Shown here in pieces: positions 10,197 through 33,000 of a stretch of 33,000 nucleotides of DNA. The notes beneath the pieces were generated by a model. It ran no database searches. It was given only the letters and a program-made list of their open reading frames with translations, and was not told the origin of the DNA. The position numbers were made by a program, and so were the translations under genes. The stretch spans positions 148,498,096-148,531,095 of the forward strand of contig NC_068983.1 in assembly GCF_001194135.2 (NCBI RefSeq). The letters are read 5' to 3'. The first letter of the stretch is position 1. The number at the start of each line of letters is the position of its first letter. Source of the DNA: Octopus bimaculoides. Its lineage: Eukaryota.

Positions 10197-11629
10197 GTGT
10201 GTATGTGTATACATGTATGTATGCATGTATATGCATATTATAATACGAGTAACGACTCCAACTCGTTGTTATAGTATCCATGTGGGAGGAGTGTGTACCG
10301 ACTACTGGCAACGAATCATATAATTGTATAAGTTGTTATAAGGTAACTAAACCAAATAGCCGTATTTTGATATCATTTAATACGAACGTTTCAAGTCTGC
10401 ATATATACAAATACACACACATACATATTCATAGATATACATTGAGATTTATATATATGTATATACAGAAATATATTGAGATTTTGTGTGTGTGTGTGTG
10501 CGCGTGGGTGTGTGTGTGTGCGTGTGTGTGTGTGTGCGCGCGCACGTGTGTTTGTATGTGTCTTCGTTTGTCTTTTCATCTTATTTAGAGTTGAGGGGTA
10601 AATTCGATGTGAAACTTAACTGTTTATTGCAAAGACGTATAAAAAACAAACTTTATTCAAATGTCAATAAATCAGCAGCAATTTATTATAATTGATTGCA
10701 TGCAATAACATTGTTCAAACATAAAGAATCTTTACTGCTCACGCAGGCTCTCCAATCTGCCGTTTTATTCCCATAAGAACGTAATATTTCAAGCATCAAG
10801 AATTATTAACAATAATGTTATAGGGTTAAAGGTTAGTAACGATTAAGAACTATTACATAGAATAATACTACACCAGCAACCGAGAGTTGAGCCTCTCTTG
10901 CACGCATATACATTCAATTTACTAACAGATTACCATAAATGTAACAGCGTTCACCACTTTCTGCAGGTCTCCCAAAGGAAACACTCAAAGTATGAGCACG
11001 CTTAATGATTTTTCGAAAATTATTTTTATTCAGTTTTGTATTTCATTAATTCACGTATTATTTTAATTATTTACTGGTTTTTTTTTTGGTTTTTTTTCAT
11101 TTTGCATTTTACTTCCCCCGCCATTTTATGCAACTCAAGCTATTTTTGGTCATCACGATTTTCATTTCTACATGATGTTATCTGCAAACTAATTAGCTCG
11201 GAATTAAAACTGAAATAATTCTCCTTGAAACAGCGGTAAATTTGTCAAGAGCACGAATTTACAGAATTCGTAGAAAATTACTTAACAGTNNNNNNNNNNN
11301 NNNNNNNNNNNNNNNNNNNNNNNNNNNNNNNNNNNNNNNNNNNNNNNNNNNNNNNNNNNNNNNNNNNNNNNNNATATATATACATGCATACATGTCTCAG
11401 AATATGTATGCATCGAATTCTTCATTAACTTACGTGTGCACGTAAATAGGTGTGGAAATATGCATGTAAATGATAAAGCGTTTGTGAAAAGTGTGTCTCT
11501 GTGTGTGTGTGTATGCGCACGCGTGCGTCTGTGTATATAAGTATATAGGTACAATTTATTATAGCATTAGTAGTATGAAGTTCAAAGATAATAAAGGTGG
11601 AGTTGTTTGTATCAAACTAATCAGTAATT

Positions 11630-12655: not shown

Positions 12656-13140
12656 TGTTTTATTGTAATGACAGTGCTAATGTACAGTACATACATTTGA
12701 TCATTATAGACAAATCATTTGTGCAGGTTGTTCGGAAAAAAGTGTTGAACATTCATACATCGTTTTCGCAATGTTATATATGCATAATTCTTCGTCTGTT
12801 GTATTTATATATTGTCTTGTTTGTTTCTGTCTCAGTATACATTCGCTAGCTTTTTCCCAGTAGCTTAATAATGGCACTGGCACCTCCAAGATTGAGTGGT
12901 CTCAATGATAATGGTGCGAGACCAGGATAATATTTTGGTTCATTGAGTCACGAGGAAAACCCAGCTGCCAATATTCCGTGTATCGTCTCTTTGCATATAT
13001 TCCCCGTCCATTAAGTTTTCGTCTAGTTTCTCGTTTGCTCTGCTTTCGTCTAACTTTTTCTCCTTGTTGTGTTCTGTCTGTTGAATCTTTGATATATATA
13101 TATGCATATATACAATGTGTGTGTGTGTGTGTATGAACGT

Positions 13141-13420
13141 CCACCAACTATTCTGCCTATATGTCTGTGCACACCTCTGAATGCAGTGTATGCCAGAAGG
13201 TTTGCAAATCTAACGAAGGCCTCAAAACACATTTTCAGATCCACAAAGATCAGAACTTATCTGCAGCTCTTGGTGGTCAAAAACGGATGTGCAATCTATG
13301 TGGGTGTGTTTTCAGAACATTGTCTGGTTTAAAAAAGCCACATCAGATGCCATGATGGTTCTAAGGTGTAGGTACAGGAGGTGGTTAAAATCTGCATAAG
13401 GAGTAGACAACCACCATATA
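13141..13420 (+). mobile_element. 5'-truncated LINE (RTE-like) 3' end with two C2H2 zinc fingers, one frameshift
   Basis: CSVCQKVCKSNEGLKTHFQIH, then CNLCGCVFRTLSGLK. Removing one A from the A6 run at about 13331-13336 restores KSHIRCHDGSKV*. A short UTR ends ACAACCACC(ATATAA)n. The terminal GLKSHIR motif is shared with 9850-10162. Confidence 0.75.
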
Positions 13421-13580
13421 AATATAAATAAATCGGTCGATATACAGTTAAGTTTATTTAAAAGAAAGTTGGTCGNNNNNNNNNNTATATATATATATAT
13501 ATTAATAACAGTTTACCCAGCTCTATGTAACATCAAGTTTCTAGGCTCGTAGAACGAACTTATCCGCCGCAAGAATGCAC

Positions 13581-14068: not shown

Positions 14069-15898
14069 TACGCGCATGCATCGATATACTGTTTCATTTT
14101 ATATACGCATGTCTTTGCCGATCACTGGCTCTAGAATCTCTTTGCCCTTGGAGAAGTATAATGCCATTATATCGATTTAGCTTTTGTTCTCGATTCATAA
14201 AAAAATATAGTTCAGTTCATACGAAGTCACCAGATCGGAAAAGGTGAATTTTCTTTGATTTCAAAACCTTTTAGCAATTCAGAGCAGTCTTCTACTATTA
14301 TCTGCTTCAAATCGGATGTCAGCTGCTGAGCTACTTACTATGCAAAGACATTTTCCGTTACCCAGAATATTACATCGTAAAAATGCAACTACTGTCCAGT
14401 TGTGCATTGAGCAAAAGGGTTGTCACTTCTCTGTCGGTACAAAAGAATTTGTCTACTACCTGACGAATCGTGTCAGTGGTCGCAGCTGTTTGTCTCACAG
14501 CACGAAGTTTACCTTCAGTGTCAGTTGCCCTTTCTTTACATGTCTCTATACATCTGTGTACATTGTTCTTCTCGGTGGTATCATCCCCTTACGCAACCTG
14601 CACGTTTCCCTCGACAAGATCTCCATGGCAACACTTCGTCTCTGTTGGAACACTTATCATATATGCAACGAAGAAGAACGTGAATAATAGCAACTATAGA
14701 GGATGAGTTACTCTGCGTATTTTAAACAAAACACGTCAAGTTATTGAAAGGATATACTCGCTTTTGCATTACTTTTGGGACAAACCAAATATATACGTAT
14801 GCCTAGCATATAAGATTTTATATATATANNNNNNNNNNNNNNNNNNNNNNNNNNNNNNNNNNNNNNNNNNNNNNNNNNNNNNNNNNATATATACATATAT
14901 ATATACATATATATATACATACATATATATACATATATATATTTATATATAGAATACATTATCTTTACATTTTATATACCACCTCAATACGTTCAAAGGT
15001 ATTTATATGTAGGCATTCATATTTCTTCATACAAATATATTTGCACACGGGTGTATCTTTGTACTTACGCACGCGCATGTAGGGGTGTGCTTGTGGTTGC
15101 GGGTAATTTCATTTTTGTGTAATGCCATAAATCCAAGAGCATTATAGCGCTCTCTGTTTAAAACATATGCATGTATATGCATTAATGCGTATATAAAACA
15201 TATATTATCATATTATCACGAATTAGATATGTTTATACTGCTCCTTGTGCATGTCTATGTATATACATATGTGTGTGTGAGAGTTCGTGCTTGTGTATGT
15301 TGGTGTGATTTGCATGCAAATATATATGTGCGTATACGGTTATGCGCGTGCGTAGGTGTGGATATATATATAGAGAGAGAGAGACACACATATACATACA
15401 CAGAAATACACACATATGCACACACACATATTAATCGTTAATGTTTTCAGCTTGCATCTCAGCTTTCGTCAATCCTCAAACCGCTATCCAACTTATTTTT
15501 ATTAACGTTCTTGTTAATATTTACATTATTTACATATTTCAAAAGAATGCCATAAAGTACATATTTACATGGGTAGCATATTATATAATATTATATTATA
15601 TTACGTATGTGCTTTGTGTGTGGGTTTCTCATGGTTACCTTTGATCCAGCATAATGGCCTTCCAATAATGCGACGAAGTGTGTGATTTCGCATCCTTCAT
15701 GCATTAACTGTTGTAAGTAATTGTACATTGTTTTCTGTGACGACCGAAACCTCGCAAGTTGGTCTTGCTTTCCGGAAGTGAAGGCTATAATCTGTAAGCA
15801 TCATTGTATTTAACAATCATACTTCAAAAACAGAGCTAATGACGTGAAAATCGGACCCGACTGGGTATCGTATATGTTCTTAATATTTTGTAGTATCA

Positions 15899-16603: not shown

Positions 16604-17323
16604 NNNNNNNNNNNNNNNNNNNNNNNNNNNNNNNNNNNNNNNNNNNNNNNNNNNNNNNNNNNNNNNNNNNNNNNNNNNNNNNNNNNNNNNNNNNNNNNNN
16701 NNNNNNNNNNNNNNNNNNNNNNNNNNNNNNNNNNNNNNNNNNNNNNNNNNNNNNNNNNNNNNNNNNNNNNNNNNNNNNNNNNNNNNNNNNNNNNNNNNNN
16801 NNNNNNNNNNNNNNNNNNNNNNNNNNNNNNNNNNNNNNNNNNNNNNNNNNNNNNNNNNNNNNNNNNNNNNNNNNNNNNNNNNNNNNNNNNNNNNNNNNNN
16901 NNNNNNNNNNNNNNNNNNNNNNNNNNNNNNNNNNNNNNNNNNNNNNNNNNNNNNNNNNNNNNNNNNNNNNNNNNNNNNNNNNNNNNNNNNNNNNNNNNNN
17001 NNNNNNNNNNNNNNNNNNNNNNNNNNNNNNNNNNNNNNNNNNNNNNNNNNNNNNNNNNNNNNNNNNNNNNNNNNNNNNNNNNNNNNNNNNNNNNNNNNNN
17101 NNNNNNNNNNNATATATATATATATATATATATATATACACGCCCAAGGAGAGACAGAAATGAAGAACGAAAAAAGAAAGGGAAAAAGAAGAGGAAAATG
17201 CGTGTATGTATAAATATATATATATATATAAATTTGAATCGGAAATGTTAAATTTTATCGTAAAGAATACACGCACAAAATTTTATAACGTTAATTTTTA
17301 CTCTGTAGAGTTTTATCAATATA

Positions 17324-17952: not shown

Positions 17953-19254
17953 NNNNNNNNNNNNNNNNNNNNNNNNNNNNNNNNNNNNNNNNNNNNNNNN
18001 NNNNNNNNNNNNNNNNNNNNNNNNNNNNNNNNNNNNNNNNNNNNNNNNNNNNNNNNNNNNNNNNNNNNNNNNNNNNNNNNATATATTATATTATATTATA
18101 TTATATTATATTATCTATCACGTATATTCACTTCGCACACCGAAACGCTTACAAATGTATATGGCAGACCTGTGAAATTTTGAAATTTAAATATTCTAAC
18201 AAGTGTTAGAATATATATGGAGTAGAATGGTAAAGCACAAATATGCATTTAAAAGAAAAAGAAAACTTAAATGTTTATATAAATTAGCACGAACAAACAG
18301 AAACACTCACACAAGCATATACATATACAGAAAGACGAGAGATAGAGAGTGAGAGAGAGAGACAGACAGAGACATAGAGAATGAAATATATATTATTCTG
18401 AAGTGATATCAACAACCAAGTATTCCTAATTCCCTGTTCAATGAAAGGTAGCAATTTCCAATGTATTGATAATTCTTGTAGTGGCCTTTATAAATTTGAT
18501 TACTCCTGAATTCGTTATTTTATTCATTCAATTATATATTTCTTCCCAACTTAATCCTATTAGATGAAACACTGATAAAGACAACATAGAGAAAAAAATG
18601 GAAGCTTTTATAAAATCTATTGATTAAATCATTAGAAATTATATTGCTTTATTACGAAGGAAGTTTTATGTGTGGTTGCCTTCGTAAGATATATTAAGTG
18701 CTTCGGAGTGAAAATATGTTGTTATTGTCATTACACACCCACTCACCCAGACACATACACATATACAATATATATATACATATATATATGCACGTATGTA
18801 TGTACACTCACACACACACACACACACACGTATATATATTTCGATTCTTGATTGGCATTAATTCATTTTATATCTATATTCATGAGATTGTTTTCCAAAC
18901 TATTGATCACATCCTTCACAAAGTGAATACAGGCAACTCGAAGAATGGCGAAGGTAATGACGGTGACGCTAATGACAACGCTGACAACGGTGTTGAGGAT
19001 GAGGACGAAGGGAAGCGAACGATTAGAATGCTGTTGACAATGAGGAGTAGGGATTGCTCGTATTAGATCTGTATCTGCTCTGCCTTGAGGTCAGAGGGTG
19101 CAGACTTTGATCAAAGTCGAGCGGTGGAAAATAGTTGGCTGTAAAAAGACGTTCATAAGAGATATTATGTTTGAAGAGCGTCTTTCAAGGATTAGCAATA
19201 CAAAGTAAGTTCGACGACTGCAGCAAAGATGATCCTTACAAAAGCTAATGGAGA

Positions 19255-25259: not shown

Positions 25260-25620
25260 GACGATTCTTTCTTTTTCTCTTTTGTAGCTCTCTTCTACTT
25301 CTAGATCTTTTGTGTAACGCTTTTGAAATTTGAAGAAAATTTACCACTTTTCAAACATATGATGATGGAAAGCCATTTAATAAAAAAAATGAAAACAGCA
25401 TTTTCGGTACATACTTCTGATCGCTTTCAATCAAGCGCCCAAAGCTTCCGAAGCCGATACAGACGTTTATGCTGTGTACGGAGAAGGCCCTATTACTGAA
25501 AGAACTACACAGAAGTGGTTTTCACGCTTCAAGGAGCGGAAAGTCTACCTGAAAGACAATACTTGTTCTGGCGAGGATCAACCGAACGATCTCATCGACG
25601 AAGATCCGTGCCAATAACCC
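25260..25620 (+). pseudogene. Mariner transposase N-terminal (HTH) fragment
   Basis: 25399-25617 is stop-free: HFRYILLIAFNQAPKASEADTDVYAVYGEGPITERTTQKWFSRFKERKVYLKDNTCSG...LIDEDPCQ*. This matches the Mos1/Hsmar1-type pattern (HFRH.LLF.F..G..A.EA...I..VYG....ERT.Q.WF.RFK.G...L.D..RSG). It is cut off by a SINE; the upstream boundary is uncertain. Confidence 0.85.
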
Positions 25621-25648
25621 AATTTATCTCATAACCACTATATATATA

Positions 25649-25818
25649 GGCGCAGGAATGGCTGTGTGGTAAGTAGTCTGCTTACCAACCACATGGCTAC
25701 GGGTTCAGCCCCACTGCGTGACACCTTGGGCAGGTGTCTTCTATAGCCTCGGGCCGACCAAAGCCTTGTGAGTGGATTTGGTAGACGGAAACTGAAAGAA
25801 GCTCGTCGTATATATATA

Positions 25819-25857
<39 letters not shown>
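25649..25857 (+). mobile_element. tRNA-derived SINE, family D, running into (GT)n and a gap
   Basis: GGCGCAGGAATGGCTGTGTGGTAAG (A box), GGGTTCAGCCCC (B box), CACCTTGGGCAGGTGTCTT, GGTAGACGGAAACTGAAAGAAGC, then TA/GT repeats. Confidence 0.85.
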
Positions 25858-26141
25858 NNNNNNNNNNNNNNNNNNNNNNNNNNNNNNNNNNNNNNNNNNN
25901 NNNNNNNNNNNNNNNNNNNNNNNNNNNNNNNNNNNNNNNNNNNNNNNNNNNNNNNNNNNNNNNNNNNNNNNNNNNNNNNNNNNNNNNNNNNNNNNNNNNN
26001 NNNNNNNNNNNNNNNNNNNNNNNNNNNNNNNNNNNNNNNNNNNNNNNNNNNNNNNNNNNNNNNNNNNNNNNNNNNNNNNNNNNNNNNNNNNNNNNNNNNN
26101 NNNNNNNNNNNNNNNNNNNNNNNNNNNNNNNNNNNNNNNNN

Positions 26142-26458
26142 TGTAAAGGGTAAAGACCGCCTCCGGTCGCAAGTGACCATGAAATTGCACATAGAAAGTT
26201 CCCCTCCAAAGCATAACTCCGGGCAAGGTTGTTTGTGGAAGACCAGCAGTCATCCATGCATTTCAGTCTCCCATCTCCATGCCACTAATGTTATCCAAGG
26301 CAAAGGCAAAGGGGCCGATACAGCTTGGCACCAGTGACGTCGCAAATCATTTCTACAGCTAGGGAACTGGACCAACGTGAAATAAAGTGTCAGCCCGGTC
26401 AAGGAATTGAACTGACAACCTCATGATTCAAGTACGATGCTGTAACCAGTGGTTCATA
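26142..26458 (-). mobile_element. SINE-like element with degenerate tRNA head
   Basis: The reverse strand begins ACCACTGGTTACAG...GAGGTTGTCAGTTCAATTCC (B box), then GACACTTTATTTCACGTTG, a block shared with family C copies. Confidence 0.6.
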
Positions 26459-26574
26459 TAATTATGCACCCACATACACACACACCATACGTCTACAGCG
26501 AAAAATTTCCTCCAGTGAATGAGTTTGTTACGTGTTCGAACATGCCCCAAGTATGTATATACCTATGGGTAGGA

Positions 26575-26700
26575 GTCTAAACATTTGGGAGGAATACAGT
26601 CCACCAAATAGACCCAGTACACGACTGTTATATATTTTATCGAACCTTGAAGTATTGAAGGTAAAGCCAACTTCGGAAACAATTTAAATTAGAACATAGG
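26575..26700 (-). mobile_element. Degenerate SINE family A fragment
   Basis: GACCCAGTAC...ATTTTATCGAACC...GAAGGTAAAGCCAACTTCGG..AATTTAAATTAGAAC parallels GACCCCAGT...TTATCGACCCC...AAAGGCAAAGTTGACTTCGG..AATGTGAACTCCGAAC of the copy at 8117-8334. Confidence 0.55.
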
Positions 26701-26883
26701 AGGAAAAGATTAGGCAAAAGAGGGATTTGTTCGTGGTTCACCTATACTGAGAATCGATCTCATCCATTCATGTTATAAACAATAAATGCAGTTATGCACA
26801 TATGCACATGCCATATCCACATACATGCTGTTAGAGATATATTGCTAAACGTAATAACATATACCATGAACTAAAACTAAAGC
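26680..26883 (+). repeat. Left arm of a 204-bp inverted duplication
   Basis: Base-by-base comparison with the reverse complement of 28023-28226 showed no mismatch. Confidence 0.95.
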
Positions 26884-27551
26884 ATTGTAGACGAATGAGA
26901 TTGTTTCTACTGTTGTCAGATTCCGCTAGAAATTAATTCAGTGATATTTAATATTGATCAAAACTACATTCTTTCTATCTTTACTATGCACACACACGCA
27001 CACTACTTTTTTCTACCTTTATGCATACATACACACACAAATACGTGCTTACTACTTTCCAGCTCTACACAGTACTTTTCCTAAAGTCTCCCTCTCAAAA
27101 CCCATTGTTTGCATTTTTCAGTAAATTTTAATTATCGATTCAACCGAAATAAAAAGCAAAATTTAAACACTTTGACATCGACTTTTCTTTTCTGCTACAT
27201 AACTCTCACTTAATATCGAGGTAAGCGAACGTAATTGTACAAAAGTAATTTATGAACTACCAAACGCAAATACCTCACTCCTACACACACATGCACACAA
27301 AAAACACACAAATATATGTATGTATCTATGTATGTATGTATCTGCTTTCTTGTATACGAGCAAGCCATTGCCTCAAAGAATCATTGAAATGAGTCACTGA
27401 TAATGCAATGTGAGGCCCAAAGATTTTCCCATTGTATTGCATAAGTACTCGCTGGCAGAAGGAACCGGTGCTATAGTATGAAGTATTTTGACATGTTCTT
27501 TTAACTGAACAGCATACCTTGCCAACAAACACACACACACGCATATATATA

Positions 27552-27583
<32 letters not shown>

Positions 27584-28022
27584 NNNNNNNNNNNNNNNNN
27601 NNNNNNNNNNNNNNNNNNNNNNNNNNNNNNNNNNNNNNNNNNNNNNNNNNNNNNNNNNATATATATGCAACCACATACACATGCTTAACAAAGTATGTTT
27701 TTGTGCTTTATGTTCCCGTTCCTTTTTCTGACATCCTGTACCCGGATATGCATCTATATATACATGGAGATGTAGTTATGTACATATATGTAGATTTCCT
27801 CTTTGCTAACACGTTGCATACAGCTGCCTAAATTAATTTTTATACACAAACACATACACACACACATACACACACATATAATGTATATACCTAATATATA
27901 GTACATATGCACACATAGGGTGTTCGGACTAATTTTTTTTTTTTTCAGTAACAGCTTGATGCATTTGTGAGAAGCCAACGGTGTTGAAGAGCATAAAGAT
28001 GAAAAGTTTTGATTAATACAAG

Positions 28023-28226
28023 GCTTTAGTTTTAGTTCATGGTATATGTTATTACGTTTAGCAATATATCTCTAACAGCATGTATGTGGATATGGCATGT
28101 GCATATGTGCATAACTGCATTTATTGTTTATAACATGAATGGATGAGATCGATTCTCAGTATAGGTGAACCACGAACAAATCCCTCTTTTGCCTAATCTT
28201 TTCCTCCTATGTTCTAATTTAAATTG
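28023..28226 (-). repeat. Right arm of a 204-bp inverted duplication
   Basis: Reverse complement of 26680-26883; directly abuts the Penelope-like remnant. Confidence 0.95.
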
Positions 28227-29077
28227 CTGAAAATTGGTAAAGAGGTAGTTGTAGCATGATGATTGGCACCAAGTATAAAAATTCTGTGATCGTGACTGCT
28301 GCTCAGTACTCTATGAACACTGTAAAAGTCTTTAAGATGTGGCATGGACGGCTGTGAGACTAAGAGTAAATGGCCAACTGGGAGGAATATAGCAGGTATT
28401 CTAACTGTGTTCGCCAGCCATTGTTCATTCTCAAATTTTTCAAAAGTGAAGCTGCTGCAGACTGTTGTTAATCGGTGGCTAGAAAAGGTTGCTGCTGGAA
28501 GGCAGCAGGATTCGGCCCTTGGCCTGTTGTGTCAACGCCCCCAAGCGAACAAGTAGGCTCGACCAAGATATATAAATAGAGGTAGTCTGACCGTGGTAAG
28601 AGTCGACTGAGGGTAGACTGACTGTTCAGTAGCTGTTGAGTAGCAGTTGCGTAGAGATCATCCGAAGGTGCAAGATAGCAGTAGCTTGAGACATAACATG
28701 GTGATAATTCCAGGAGTCAGAAGTAGTATCTACCACTTCACAGCCCCAATTTCTGGCTTCTTAATCCTTGAGAGTAATTCCATGGATTAATATGTGTGAG
28801 ACGCGGTTGAGAAAGGCACGAACAGCCCTGCCTGTAACATCAACTTGAGGTATGAGTGTGAGTCTGTGTGTTTGTAGTGGATGGAGGTGGTGAGAGTGGA
28901 GTGATGAATACTGACCGAAATGTCGAGAAAGGCGACTGAGGTGTCGGAAATCGTGCAGGAGAAGTGGAGGGCAGGATGGAAAGATTTGACAAAAGATAGG
29001 AAAGAGTCTAGATGTTCACAGGAGAGTCAGGTCGCACCGATACAGTTGGCAATATAACAACCGTATAGTTCAGGAGT
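28227..29077 (-). mobile_element. Penelope-like retroelement remnant (RT core plus probable GIY-YIG C-terminus)
   Basis: 29077 to about 28845 reads TPELYGCYIANCIGAT*LSCEHLDSFLSFVKSFHPALHFSCTISDTSVAFLDISVSIHHSTLTTSIHYKHTDSHSYL. This is the PLE RT pattern (YIDD decayed to YIAN, FHP.L.F, FLD, YK.TDSH.YL). RIFILG near 28270-28290 resembles the PLE endonuclease end. Confidence 0.85.
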
Positions 29078-29080
29078 GGG

Positions 29081-29139
<59 letters not shown>

Positions 29140-29436
29140 AATTTTCGCTGAAACTAATCCAGTTTCAATTTCTTTACGCAGTTCCTGCCCTGTACGTCAG
29201 TTACATTTTATGCCACATTGTCTTATTTTTCCTAGGTATAGCGAATGTTTCTGTATATCATGTAAATTCATTCACAAGGTTGTTGCTGTCGCTATTGTTG
29301 CAGGTGTGTCTGTTCTATTTTAAGCCTAACTCATTTCTGTGCCAACAAACTGACCAATTGCATTCTAATTACTAGCTATGCCACCATATTTTCCAGCATT
29401 GTTTACCTAGGTTTACATTATTTAATATATTCTTCT

Positions 29437-29510
29437 TTTTGAAGATAATAATTGAGCTATATTTAACTTGCTATATTTATTTTGAAGAATAAATTGAACT
29501 ATATTTAACT
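29437..29510. repeat. Imperfect tandem duplication, period about 43
   Basis: TTTTGAAGA(T)AATA(A)ATTGA(G/A)CTATATTTAACT occurs twice. Confidence 0.8.
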
Positions 29511-30502
29511 GCCTTTCAGAATAAATCGAATGATCACGTAACGTTACTCAGATTGCGGTGGAAACGGAACATAGTGTTAATGGCAAATTAATTTTTTGCA
29601 TATAAACTACTGACGCTCAACATCTTTGTTACAAAGATACACTATAATAGCTTGTACGTCCTCGAAGTCTATAAAATGAGTACTAGAATTGGAGCCGAAT
29701 TCCAATGATACTCCTTTACAATTGTGTTGCCTTGTACAACGACGAGCTGGGTGATGTTTGCCGAGGATAGTTTCCAAAGCGCCAAAATAAGGAAACGCAA
29801 AACTGAAACAGGGAGTAAAATCCAACTGAATAACAGCAAATGAAAACAACAAGAATAGATTAGTAGAAGTGCCTCCTCAATAGAAAGATTATGCTTCTAC
29901 TCGAGTAACAATTAAGTTGTTGATGAAGAGAATAGCAAACTAAGATTCACCGTAATTCGAAGATCGATCCAGAAGGACTTTAGGTAATCCCATGTCAATG
30001 GTGCATGGAGATTGACTATTGAAACGCATTTGGGTTTGGAATATAAGGCACACTTGAAGGACAGGATGCCATTACAAACAATACAAAGATATTACACAGC
30101 TTATTATCCATCCATTCAAAAAATGCTAAGAGCACACTCGGGTCAACAACGCTTCATGGGCTCGCGGAGAAACACCAACTTGATCCAGTAAGTAGATTCT
30201 TAGCCGCGTGTGGGCCAGAACCTAACAAGGTTTGGATGTATTATTTCGTTTTAAATTTAAGCATACCTTGCTTAATCGTTGCATTCTTTAATATACATTT
30301 TCATTCATTTGTGATTTTGTGTACATGTTAGTAATTACTTGGATTTTTATTAGTTATCTTGTCCTTTTAATTTTAAAACCTTTTCTAAATTTCCCCTCGA
30401 CTACATACAACTTTTCTTTCACTCCCTAAATGTATCTGTAAGCAACTTGTTTCATCTGCGCCGTATTTTCTATATTTTTTTTGGAGCCCTGGTGGCTTAT
30501 TT

Positions 30503-30650
30503 AGAAAGAACTATTGACTTTGCCTTTCATCATTTCAGGAACGCTAAAATAAAGTACAAACTAACTATTGGAATCTACTACACTTTCCCCGAATGTCAGC
30601 CTTGTGACAAAATTTAAAACAAGTTTGTTATTATTAGTAGTAGTATTGTA
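30503..30650 (+). mobile_element. Degenerate SINE family A 3' half
   Basis: TTGACTTTGCCTTTCATCATTTCAGG...AAAATAAAGTAC...CAGCCTTGTG...(TTA/GTA)n tail. Confidence 0.65.
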
Positions 30651-30663
30651 ACTGATTTAAGCA

Positions 30664-30704
<41 letters not shown>

Positions 30705-31818
30705 CACACACACACGCGCACATATACACACACATACATATATATATATCGATTTTTTCTTATGAATTAAGCATATCAAACGAAACAACCCACCTTTATA
30801 AGTCTAGATATTAGATATTGGAGAAATATATGCCCACTAGCCATTGTTCTACCATATAAGTTTAATGAACAGGTAAGCATACATTATAATTGGCCAATGA
30901 CACAGGTTCGATTCTTATTTAAATCGATTTCATTTTTGTATGCTACAAGCGCTTTTGGAAGGAAAAAATGCATGGTAACTTCTCATGTAGTCTTCTTCCA
31001 TGATATCGGAGCTTTACTTCTTACTAAATGTAATCAATAGAAATAATGATTCATTTAATATAGAAAACATAATATTCTGAGTAATATACTCTATGATATA
31101 ATTTGATTTCAAACTGAAGATCGTTATATTTATTTAAGATGTAAAGGGAACAATAACCCATTGTCCTCTTCCAAGAAAAAATACATAATTTTCATGCCTA
31201 CTCAGACAGAACTCAATAACTGGTGTTATCCTTTATATCCATATCAGTCATGATCAAGGAGAATACATGATCAAAGGTGTTCCAGCCGCAAGGATCAATT
31301 TCTTTTTATTTCGTTTCTTTTATCATGTATAGTGTATATGAAATTGCATTATTCAATATGTCCTTTTTCACAAGCTCTGAGGGAAATTTTGCTTCTATAG
31401 TTTACCAGGCTGAATAACCCAATAATAGTTACTACATTCCATTAAGCACCGTCGATTTGGGAAATTTTTCAAAAAACGTATACTCCCCAAACCATTCCGA
31501 ATCACTTATGACGTTAATGCTTTTGAGATAAGTATAGACGAACGTGACCCTATATCCAGATAAGAATATGAACTTCTGTCTACTGCATAACAGAGCTTCA
31601 AGCATATTCGTTTCTCATTTTGCTTTACAACGATTATTATATGAAAATATAAAACGTATACCGCAAAACGAAGTCAATGAAATCAGTACTAGTAATTATT
31701 ATGGGCTGAAACTGTTAGATACGCCCCTACGCATTACTAGAAAGGCTTTTGCGCCTATGGAAGAAATCAATAGGCTGGGTTGTACATTGACTGGGTGTGG
31801 TTGATGCATAATAAAAGC

Positions 31819-31820
<2 letters not shown>

Positions 31821-31911
<91 letters not shown>

Positions 31912-32035
31912 CTCCTTTTCTCTTCATCGCACTCTCTCACTCTCACATTCGGTCTCTCTCTCTCTCTCTCTTTCTATTTCTTCCTCTCTCTCTCTCTTTC
32001 TCTTTCTTTCTTTCTTTCTCTCTCTCTCTCTCTCC

Positions 32036-32066
<31 letters not shown>

Positions 32067-32068
32067 TT
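31821..32068. repeat. Long (CA)n followed by (CT)n-rich tract
   Basis: (CA)n 31821-31909; CT-rich about 31910-32068. Confidence 0.95.
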
Positions 32069-32919
32069 GCTGAAATGTTCATATTTCGGATCGATACCAA
32101 AGAATTGTATTTTCTATAAAGGGGAAGTAACAACGTAATTCTTGCTCAAGTGCCTGACCAATATCAAAGCAGCTGTTCAGTTTCCTTCAATTGTAATACT
32201 TGAATAAAGAAGTATTTTGTTCTAATACACAATAAAAGAATACAGAAAAGTCTATTTGAGTTGATAACATTATAACAATAACCAAGGCAGACGGTTTATT
32301 ACCTTTTCTTTATATTCTTTCTTTGATTCACGATAAGACTACGAAAATCACGATAGATTGAATTAAAACAGGCGTAATGTTTTACGCAGACACACACATA
32401 AATATATACGTATCTATACACGCACGCTACATACATGCAAAGCGCATATACGCACATACATACATACATACATACATACATACACATAGATAAAAATGGT
32501 AGATAAATATCAGTGTATATCTATTCTGAATGTTATAGTCTCTTTAATCTCGCCTCTCATTCTCTTTCTGCCCACGTCTCTCCCTCTCTCTATCAGCCCC
32601 GCTCTTTCCCCCATCCGGTCTTTTCCCATTACGAAGATATTTACTGGAAGTCATAAGAATACCAGCTTTTTTAATGGCAGAGTAAAGGTGAACAAGTGCA
32701 CTGAGCATATCAAACATTCAAAACAGTTGACTATGCATTTGTAGGCAAGGAGGCCAATGAACCTTGCTTTCACTCTAAACATATTACATGTTTAAAGAGC
32801 AGGTATGGAAGCCGAGAGAATCCGTTTGATCGATTACATTGCACAAACCAAGTTGACGAACAGACGATTGATTGCTATTCTCGTATCAAATACTGTCTTA
32901 ACGATATAAATGCGCGCGT

Positions 32920-33000
<81 letters not shown>
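32920..33000. repeat. (CA)n-(TA)n microsatellite
   Basis: Directly visible at the window end. Confidence 0.95.

What the first reader, a model, noticed from the sequence alone, without database searches (positions are those of the whole stretch)
26680..28226. Apparently perfect 204-bp inverted duplication fused to the 3' end of a Penelope-like element
Seen: 26680-26883 equals the reverse complement of 28023-28226 with no mismatch found. The spacer is 1139 nt (75 of them N). The match extends 5 more bases (TTGTA) after one mismatch at the inner ends. The duplicated DNA is mostly unique sequence, so this is not a pair of dispersed repeats or known TIRs. The first ~20 nt of the left arm continue a decayed SINE, while the right arm joins directly to the Penelope 3' end. 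Inference: the left arm is ancestral and the right a recent copy, made by template switching or repair at the retroelement end, or by a staggered-break micro-inversion. Established: Penelope-like elements often have inverted or rearranged ends, and coleoids have very high ADAR editing. If transcribed, the arms would form a long perfect duplex suitable for editing or back-splicing. The identical arms next to a decayed Penelope imply the duplication is younger than the element.
Basis: partly seen in the sequence, partly recalled or inferred. Interest (0 to 1): 0.7.

Follow-up and report, generated by a model that had tools for sequence, protein, structure and literature searches.

The report
Inverted copy-paste insertion in a transposon
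A 204-base stretch of octopus-type DNA was recently copied backwards from about 1.1 kb upstream and pasted into a break inside an old DNA-transposon remnant (not a Penelope element), an ordinary repair scar that here shows its source, its 5-base priming match and its small deletion.

Summary
The inverted repeat is real in the sequence. Arms 26680-26889 and 28017-28226 match at 209 of 210 bases, with sharp ends and E 1e-105.

The Penelope claim is not supported. No reading frame has a reverse transcriptase or GIY-YIG match, and there is no hammerhead ribozyme.

The DNA flanking the right arm is a decayed Tc1/mariner-type (DDE_3) transposon copy on the + strand. Five related copies from other contigs align straight across the join 28022|28227. 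The window lacks only about 29 bases there. So 28023-28226 is a 204-base insertion into that copy.

TACAAG (28017-28022) is native transposon sequence. The extra 5-base match (TACAA/TTGTA) is therefore microhomology, and G28022 is a mismatched primer end.

The left arm is the source. A decayed SINE-like repeat runs unbroken across its outer edge.

Best explanation: a microhomology-primed snap-back or template-switch repair of a break. This refutes the staggered-break micro-inversion.

The N gap lies in an (AT)n run and touches neither arm. The arms' spacing and orientation still rest on scaffolding, and no reads could be checked. This is a known kind of event, of modest interest.

The parts
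26680..26883 (+). Source segment (left arm): the 204 nt that were copied
   Evidence: A perfect reverse complement of 28023-28226. It sits in its native context, because the SINE-like repeat runs across 26679|26680 without a break.
26885..26889 (+). TTGTA: the microhomology site where the invading 3' end (TACAA) paired. A26884 next to it is the mismatched position.
   Evidence: One search shows the mismatch at 26884 followed by 5 matches. One search shows that the partner TACAAG is native transposon sequence.
26563..26803 (.). Decayed SINE-like repeat spanning the outer edge of the left arm. About 90-120 nt of the arm derive from it.
   Evidence: nhmmer with a model of four in-window copies hits 26587-26708, E 9e-7, envelope 26563-26729. 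Smith-Waterman against the family consensus covers 26582-26803 with score 37.5 and z 12.7, reached by 0 of 500 shuffles. The outer part ends at about consensus position 147 and the arm part starts at position 152.
26890..28016 (+). Spacer (loop) in its native orientation: microsatellite-rich DNA plus the 5' part of the transposon copy
   Evidence: Its right end (27915-28022) is collinear with the transposon family and continues at 28227. The spacer was therefore not inverted.
27584..27658 (.). Assembly gap (75 N, length only estimated) inside an (AT)n microsatellite
   Evidence: AT run on both edges with phase preserved. All 8 gaps of the window lie at dinucleotide repeats.
27915..28022 (+). 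Left part of a decayed Tc1/mariner-type (DDE_3) transposon copy, ending in the native TACAAG that served as primer end
   Evidence: blastn of 27940-28022 against L001, L002, L004 and L005 gives E 2e-6 to 6e-6, immediately upstream of the block that matches 28227 onward. The alignment is collinear.
28023..28226 (+). Templated insertion (right arm): the inverted copy of 26680-26883, replacing about 29 nt of transposon sequence
   Evidence: It is absent from all five related copies, which carry 28-29 nt of unrelated family sequence at this point.
28227..28881 (+). Right part of the same transposon copy (C-terminal transposase region, decayed). Its 3' end was not located.
   Evidence: blastn of 28227-28548 against L002 gives E 1e-22, and 28725-28843 matches L001 at E 1e-13. 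tblastx reaches 28881. tblastn of a PF13358 protein (P0006) hits 28446-28517 on the + strand, E 8e-5.

Best explanation
This is a recent DNA-level repair scar: a microhomology-primed, templated inverted insertion. It arose either by snap-back synthesis at a resected double-strand break or by the equivalent replication template switch. An old Tc1/mariner-type transposon copy (27915 to at least 28881, + strand) was broken between the positions now numbered 28022 and 28227, and about 29 nt were lost. The + strand 3' end ...AATACAAG folded back and paired through TACAA with TTGTA at 26885-26889, about 1.13 kb upstream on the same strand. Its last base, G, was mismatched against A26884. The end was then extended for 204 nt, copying 26883 down to 26680. 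It was released and joined to the other end at 28227 with no more than 1 nt of homology. The product reads as a 210-nt inverted repeat with one mismatch. Shown: the repeat itself; that the right arm is an insertion into a repeat copy with a ~29-nt deletion; that TACAAG is native sequence; that the left arm sits in its native context. Inferred: the break, the priming step and the enzymes involved. No function is implied. If the region were transcribed, the arms could form a ~210-bp duplex.
For: The repeat and its sharp ends. The empty-site test: five independent copies of the flanking repeat family (Logan contigs L001-L005) match the window in two blocks, 27940-28022 and 28227-28548. These blocks lie 29-30 nt apart in the copies but 204 nt apart in the window. 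MAFFT of the joined flanks aligns straight through the join, with a 28-29-nt gap in the window only, and the arm has no counterpart in any copy. Window bases 28017-28022 align without a gap to family sequence ending in AAG in four of the five copies (AAC in L002). So the 5-nt match predates the event and lies exactly at the start of the copy. Source polarity: the SINE-like repeat is collinear across 26679|26680, while the reverse complement of 28227 onward shows no continuation of it. Scaffold coherence: both gaps bordering the left contig end in matching microsatellites, (TG)n|TGT and (AT)n|(AT)4. A nearby upstream source on the same strand is what the mechanism requires. Known precedents: small inverted duplications with 2-bp microhomology formed by self-annealing of resected ends (bioRxiv 10.1101/2024.12.14.628481), and snap-back templated synthesis in alternative end joining (titles listed).
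Against: No reads, second assembly or orthologous locus could be reached, so both junctions of the insertion rest on one short-read scaffold assembly. A gap lies between the two copies, which Ko et al. 2022 (PMC9516828) list as a hallmark of false duplications. The 100% identity could be inflated if the assembler collapsed the two copies. At 204 nt with a ~1.1-kb loop, the insert is much longer than the usual templated inserts of polymerase-theta joining (my own knowledge, not tested). The ~29-nt deletion could be an unrelated earlier or later event. The terminal G·A mismatch adds one assumption to the priming step.
Confidence: 0.8

Rival explanations
1. Assembly artefact: the genome holds one copy of the 204-mer and the second was created or misplaced during contig building, gap closing or scaffolding. 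Alternatively the 1.4-kb contig 26142-27583 is misoriented or misplaced, so the repeat is not a local inverted one.
For: The window is a gap-rich short-read scaffold with 8 gaps in 33 kb. The left arm lies on a 1442-nt contig bounded by two gaps, and a gap separates the arms. Gaps between duplicated pairs are typical of false duplications (PMC9516828). Perfect identity is what a collapsed repeat placed twice would give.
Against: All four junctions lie 358-694 nt inside contigs, not at gap edges. The flanks on both sides of both copies are unrelated, so these are not two haplotypes of one locus. The junctions share only 5 nt and 0-1 nt, too little for a k-mer graph or gap closer to join by mistake. 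The insertion sits at one precise point of a transposon copy and carries a repair-type signature of microhomology plus a small deletion. False mate links through the shared 204-mer would tend to superimpose the copies in the same orientation, not set them 1.1 kb apart and inverted (inference). The microsatellite edges of both gaps fit the given orientation.
Confidence: 0.1
2. Staggered-break micro-inversion (the Ranz et al. model). The spacer was inverted, and the 210 nt lying between two staggered nicks at one breakpoint were filled in on both sides, leaving inverted duplications at the ends of the inverted segment.
For: The anatomy fits at first sight. Inverted duplications of ancestrally unique DNA flank inverted segments, with a median size of 321 bp (46 bp to 1.9 kb), and in 12 of 18 cases they come from only one breakpoint (PMC1885836).
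Against: This model needs the reverse complement of 26890 onward to have been the ancestral neighbour of 28227. Instead, the present right end of the spacer (27915-28022) and 28227 onward are adjacent parts of one transposon copy, in the same orientation as in five relatives. The mismatch falls exactly between a 5-nt match and a perfect 204-nt block, which a random later substitution would do only about 3% of the time (6 of 210 positions).
Confidence: 0.03
3. Retroelement-linked origin. The copy was made by reverse-transcriptase template switching, or by repair of the break made during insertion of a Penelope-like or LINE element whose end abuts the right arm.
For: Target-primed reverse transcription can leave small inverted duplications of genomic DNA next to insertions (10.1101/2024.12.14.628481). 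Penelope-like elements are present and have been active in Octopus vulgaris (PMC13282606).
Against: No RT, GIY-YIG or hammerhead signal was found in the six-frame translation of 28200-33000 or in the open stretches of 55 aa or more of 1-28200. The sequence at 28227 onward is the interior of a DDE_3 DNA transposon that continues on the other side of the arm. No element end exists at 28227, and there is no poly(A) or target-site duplication at the arm's edges.
Confidence: 0.03
4. The arms are terminal inverted repeats of a mobile element (a long-TIR MITE or foldback element), or two independent insertions of one dispersed repeat in opposite orientation.
For: The arms are long, identical and inverted, about 1.1 kb apart. 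The outermost bases (CAATTTAAATT...) contain a palindrome that could hide a TTAA-type target duplication.
Against: An older SINE-like repeat crosses the left outer edge collinearly, so that edge is not an element terminus. The right arm carries that copy's private, ~35%-diverged version of the SINE fragment, truncated at 28226. No direct repeat flanks the pair. No other copy exists in the window. The spacer's right end belongs to the transposon copy that continues beyond the right arm.
Confidence: 0.02

Closest known systems
Snap-back / synthesis-dependent microhomology-mediated end joining with templated insertions (polymerase-theta-type alternative end joining)
   Same: The 3' end pairs by a few bases with nearby sequence on its own strand and is extended. 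This leaves an insert that is the reverse complement of flanking DNA, together with a small deletion at the break. Here that is 5-nt microhomology, a ~29-nt deletion and an inverted templated insert.
   Different: Reported templated inserts are usually a few to a few tens of bases, copied from within tens of bases of the break (own knowledge; only the titles were seen). Here the insert is 204 nt, copied from about 1.1 kb away.
Inverted duplications from self-annealing of resected double-strand-break ends, and replication template switching (FoSTeS/MMBIR-type)
   Same: A long 3' overhang or nascent strand re-primes at an upstream microhomology and copies hundreds of bases in inverted orientation. 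2-bp microhomologies and inverted duplications beside breaks are described in 10.1101/2024.12.14.628481.
   Different: Those cases were tied to L1 endonuclease breaks or to disease and cancer rearrangements. Here the cause of the break is unknown, and the site is inside an inactive DNA-transposon remnant in a germline genome.
Inverted duplications at inversion breakpoints from staggered breaks (Ranz et al. 2007, PMC1885836)
   Same: A similar size range (46 bp to 1.9 kb), duplication of non-repetitive DNA, inverted orientation, and often only one breakpoint duplicated.
   Different: The segment between the arms is not inverted here, so this is not a member of that class.
Penelope-like element terminal arrangements (pLTRs, inverted or tandem ends)
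   Same: Only the superficial picture of an inverted repeat beside a repeat element.
   Different: No RT, GIY-YIG or hammerhead ribozyme was found. The neighbour is a DDE_3 transposon, and the arm is copied from unrelated DNA upstream.

Membership tests
   Pfam scan of all six frames of 28200-33000, and of every open stretch of 55 aa or more in 1-28200, found no RVT family at E<=1 or E<=0.01 respectively.
   No GIY-YIG hit. The composite of open frames from 28217-29026 found no protein relative at all.
   Rfam found nothing at gathering score in the whole window, and no hammerhead at E<=1 in 25500-30500.
Tc1/mariner-superfamily DNA transposon (DDE_3 transposase), decayed copy | Similarity to DDE_3 transposases | tested here: met
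   Proteins carrying PF13358 or named transposase / Tcb2 transposase (P0006-P0031) hit the related copies L001-L005 by tblastn at E 1e-13 to 1e-23. They hit the window at 28446-28517 (+) at E 8e-5. Pfam itself is silent on these decayed frames. Caveat: the proteins were fetched with a hand-made consensus, but the tblastn step uses real database proteins against real DNA.
Tc1/mariner-superfamily DNA transposon (DDE_3 transposase), decayed copy | Terminal inverted repeats and a TA target duplication | tested here: inconclusive
   L003 has a ~25-nt terminal inverted repeat about 840 nt apart. In the window the 5' end aligns at about 27915, but no 3' TIR was found. The TA duplication was not assessed.
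Microhomology-mediated templated (snap-back / template-switch) insertion | The insert is an exact reverse-complement copy of nearby DNA | tested here: met
   28023-28226 equals the reverse complement of 26680-26883 at 204 of 204 positions.
Microhomology-mediated templated (snap-back / template-switch) insertion | Microhomology between the pre-existing primer end and the template at the start of the copy | tested here: met
   TACAA (28017-28021) is native transposon sequence by family alignment. It pairs with TTGTA 26885-26889 directly next to the first copied base. There is one terminal mismatch.
Microhomology-mediated templated (snap-back / template-switch) insertion | The insert interrupts otherwise continuous sequence (an empty site can be reconstructed), often with a small deletion | tested here: met
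   The joined flanks align collinearly with five related copies, and 28-29 nt are missing. This uses paralogous copies, not the orthologous empty allele.
Microhomology-mediated templated (snap-back / template-switch) insertion | An allele or orthologue without the insert exists | not testable with these tools
   No cephalopod genome or reads were reachable. The exact-ORF look-up, the composite protein search and the metagenome scan were all empty.
Staggered-break inversion with flanking inverted duplication | The segment between the duplicates is inverted relative to the ancestral order | tested here: not met
   The spacer end 27915-28022 and 28227 onward are contiguous, same-strand parts of one transposon copy.
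False duplication (assembly error) | A gap between the two copies on one scaffold | tested here: met
   The gap 27584-27658 lies between the arms. The criterion is from PMC9516828.
False duplication (assembly error) | The copies are alternative versions of one locus (similar flanks), with half or low read depth and discordant pairs | tested here: not met
   The flanks are unrelated on all four sides. Read depth and read pairs are not testable with these tools.

The most novel reading that the evidence does not exclude
Long-range snap-back insertions of this size could be a recurrent mutation class in repeat-rich coleoid genomes. Each would create, in one step, a perfect ~200-bp hairpin. Where such hairpins are transcribed, they would supply new substrates for ADAR editing or small-RNA production. 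This locus would then be a young, still unedited-looking example.
Probability: 0.05. Interest if true: 0.6.

Novelty: new member of a known kind. Interest (0 to 1): 0.3.

Why it matters
The event is a clean natural example of a large templated inverted insertion. The source, the priming microhomology, the mismatched primer end and the deletion can all be read from one sequence. The empty site could be inferred from paralogous repeat copies even without an orthologue.

It corrects an annotation: the neighbour is a DDE_3 DNA transposon, not a Penelope element. It also shows that a perfect inverted repeat next to an assembly gap need not be an artefact.

It has no demonstrated function. Its wider value would come only from a genome-wide count of such events, or from evidence that the hairpin is transcribed.

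Tried and rejected
(1) Independent copies of the locus. The exact look-up of the 70-aa ORF 28344-28556, a composite of 15 open frames against 5.8 billion proteins and a 25-mer of the arm against metagenome contigs all came back empty.

The single exact 105-aa frame was used instead, and that gave the decisive lead.

(3) Penelope tests by Pfam and Rfam were negative.

(4) An apparent resemblance between the two inner flanks (TTGATCAAAACT... against TTAATCAAAACT...) was no better than shuffles.

(5) The T13 run at 27933-27945 was considered as a possible poly(A) tail of a minus-strand retrocopy. It was rejected because four such runs occur in the window and this run lies inside the transposon's 5' region.

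(6) 3' transduction or a SINE retrocopy origin of the right arm was rejected. The copy lacks the SINE 3' part, a tail and target duplications, and no source element lies upstream of 26680.

(7) A heterozygous simple inversion cannot produce the four observed junctions (reasoned, not computed).

(8) P0001 (821 aa, nine stretches) looks like a repetitive bacterial-type protein and was disregarded.

(9) The 3' end of the transposon copy in the window was not found.

(10) Pfam does not recognise the decayed transposase frames of the window or of L001-L003.

Full report
**1. Observation**

Reading the sequence, the repeat finder and a direct comparison agree.
- 26680-26889 is the reverse complement of 28017-28226 at 209 of 210 positions.
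- The match has three parts: a perfect 204-nt block (26680-26883 / 28023-28226), one mismatch (A26884 against G28022), and five more matches (TTGTA / TACAA).
- Similarity ends abruptly on all four sides. Gapped local alignment of the inner and outer flanks scores no better than shuffled sequence.
- blastn gives E 1.7e-105.
- It is the only long inverted repeat in the window that is not built from microsatellites or N runs.

**2. The gap**

The window has eight N runs, and every one abuts a dinucleotide microsatellite.
- The gap at 27584-27658 has a 29-nt AT run on its left and (AT)4 on its right. With 75 N the AT phase is kept.
- The simplest reading is an unread (AT)n tract of unknown true length. 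No reading frame is involved.
- The gap lies 694 nt from the left arm and 358 nt from the right arm, so it affects neither arm nor any of the four junctions.
- It does mean that the arms sit on different contigs: 26142-27583 (only 1442 nt, gaps on both sides) and 27659 onward. Their spacing and relative orientation are therefore scaffold-level statements.
- The contig edges fit the given orientation: (TG)n|N|TGT on the left and (AT)n|N|(AT)4 on the right.

**3. The left arm is in its native context**

A SINE-like repeat family has four other copies in the window: 3997-4298, 8098-8388, 16108-15841 and 30649-30480.
- A profile of these four copies hits 26587-26708 at E 9e-7, with envelope 26563-26729.
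- blastn extends the match to 26748.
- Against the family consensus, 26582-26803 aligns with score 37.5 (z 12.7, reached by 0 of 500 shuffles).
- The part outside the arm ends at about consensus position 147, and the part inside the arm starts at position 152. One old, roughly 35%-diverged insertion therefore crosses the arm's outer edge without a break.
- The reverse complement of 28227 onward shows no continuation of the repeat. The right arm is thus a truncated copy of this particular decayed SINE copy plus the adjoining DNA. That excludes two independent insertions of a dispersed repeat.

**4. The neighbour is not a Penelope-like element**
- Pfam scans of all six frames of 28200-33000, and of every open stretch of 55 aa or more in the rest of the window, found no reverse transcriptase and no GIY-YIG domain.
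- Rfam found no hammerhead ribozyme.
- A composite of open frames from 26142-29026 found no protein relative.

**5. What the neighbour is, and the decisive test**

A full HMMER search with the 105-aa open stretch 28217-28531 (minus strand) found four short unnamed ORFs.
- Their contigs (L001-L005, Logan assemblies of SRR11869384/85/90/91) are copies of one repeat family of about 0.85 kb. L003 shows ~25-nt terminal inverted repeats.
- On the strand that corresponds to the window's + strand, these copies encode a decayed transposase C-terminal region.
- Real database proteins that carry Pfam PF13358 (DDE_3), or are named transposase / Tcb2 transposase, hit the copies by tblastn at E 1e-13 to 1e-23. 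They hit the window at 28446-28517 (+) at E 8e-5.
- The flank is therefore a Tc1/mariner-superfamily DNA-transposon remnant.

Every copy matches the window in two blocks: 27940-28022 and 28227-28548.
- The blocks lie 29-30 nt apart in the copies and 204 nt apart in the window.
- Aligning the joined flanks (27915-28022 + 28227-28345) with the five copies gives a collinear alignment straight through the join. The only gap is 28-29 nt, in the window sequence.
- The arm itself has no counterpart in any copy.
- Hence 28023-28226 is a 204-nt insertion inside one transposon copy, and it replaces about 29 nt.

**6. Mechanism**
- In the family alignment, window bases 28017-28022 (TACAAG) align without a gap to family sequence, which ends in AAG in four of the five copies (AAC in L002). 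They are therefore native to the transposon.
- It follows that the five-base extension of the repeat is microhomology that existed before the event, and G28022 is not a later mutation of a copied base.
- Best-supported sequence of events:
  1. A break, or a collapsed replication fork, occurred in the transposon copy.
  2. About 29 nt were lost.
  3. The + strand 3' end ...TACAAG paired through TACAA with TTGTA at 26885-26889, about 1.13 kb upstream on the same strand, with a terminal G·A mismatch.
  4. DNA synthesis copied 26883 back to 26680.
  5. The new end joined to 28227 with no more than 1 nt of homology (junction sequences).
- A snap-back on a resected end and a replication template switch give the same product. 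I cannot separate the two.
- Comparable inverted duplications made by self-annealing of resected ends with 2-bp microhomology are described in 10.1101/2024.12.14.628481.
- With 0 of 204 differences between the copies, against roughly 25-37% divergence of the transposon copy from its relatives and about 35% for the SINE, the event is much younger than the repeats around it. It may still be polymorphic (inference).

**7. Rivals**
- **Staggered-break inversion** (PMC1885836). The size fits, but the model predicts that the spacer is inverted and that the reverse complement of 26890 onward once adjoined 28227. The transposon collinearity contradicts this.
- **Retroelement-end origin.** This fails because no element end lies at 28227.
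- **TIR or dispersed-repeat reading.** This fails on the SINE continuity, the lack of target duplications and the absence of other copies.
- **Assembly artefact.** This cannot be excluded without reads.
  - For it: a gap separates the copies, which is a recognised warning sign (PMC9516828), and perfect identity could come from collapsing.
  - Against it: the four junctions are well inside contigs; the flanks are unrelated; the junction overlaps (5 nt and 0-1 nt) are too short for graph or gap-closing errors; and the insertion carries a coherent repair signature at one point of a known repeat.
  - I put it at about 10%.

**8. Function and novelty**
- The arms could form a duplex of about -365 kcal/mol as RNA.
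- Nothing here shows transcription, editing or back-splicing.
- No exon-like coding signal was found nearby. The only clear Pfam hit in the window is a Mos1-type HTH remnant at 25393-25614.
- This is a new instance of a known kind of mutation. It is noteworthy mainly for its size and for how completely its history can be read.

Noticed in passing
window 25393-25614 (+): An open frame matching Pfam HTH_48 (N-terminal HTH of the Mos1 mariner transposase), E 1.4e-11. It is a separate mariner-type remnant about 2.3 kb upstream of the DDE_3 transposon copy at 27915. I did not resolve whether the two belong to one ancient element.
   Followed up: partly
window 25640-25857 (+): A GC-richer block ending in (TA)n(TG)n that runs into the 284-N gap. 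From memory it looks like the common octopus tRNA-derived SINE, but Rfam gave no tRNA-like hit and the window holds no second copy.
   Followed up: partly
window 3997-4298, 8098-8388, 16108-15841 (-), 30649-30480 (-), 26563-26803: Five copies of one SINE-like repeat family, 60-70% alike. They were used here to build the consensus that shows continuity across the left arm's edge.
   Followed up: yes
window 9850-10311 (-) and 13137-13352 (+): Open frames with repeated C..C...H...H spacing. The 153-aa ORF ends ...CRACGRECDSAGGLKRHAKAH...CQRCARHCRSLAGLKSHIRSQHR. There is a weak zf-C2H2 Pfam hit at 13137-13352 (E 0.003-0.005, below the curated cut-off). These are possibly remnants of another mobile element or a zinc-finger gene fragment.
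   Followed up: no
window gaps 5108-5495, 11290-11373, 13476-13485, 14829-14886, 16604-17111, 17953-18080, 25858-26141, 27584-27658: All eight assembly gaps abut dinucleotide microsatellites, seven (AT)n and one (TG)n. This points to a short-read assembly that breaks systematically at these tracts.
   Followed up: yes
window 28217-28531 (-); L001 1044-1748, L002 368-829, L003 1584-1856, L004/L005 606-845: The strand opposite the decayed transposase keeps open frames of 79-234 aa in several diverged copies. Their translations are recognisably related to one another (E down to 1e-8). This is probably a by-product of the codon structure of the sense strand, but it was not explained further.
   Followed up: no
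window 7268-7385 and 7419-7536: A 118-nt direct repeat, 79% identical, 151 nt start to start. It was not examined.
   Followed up: no
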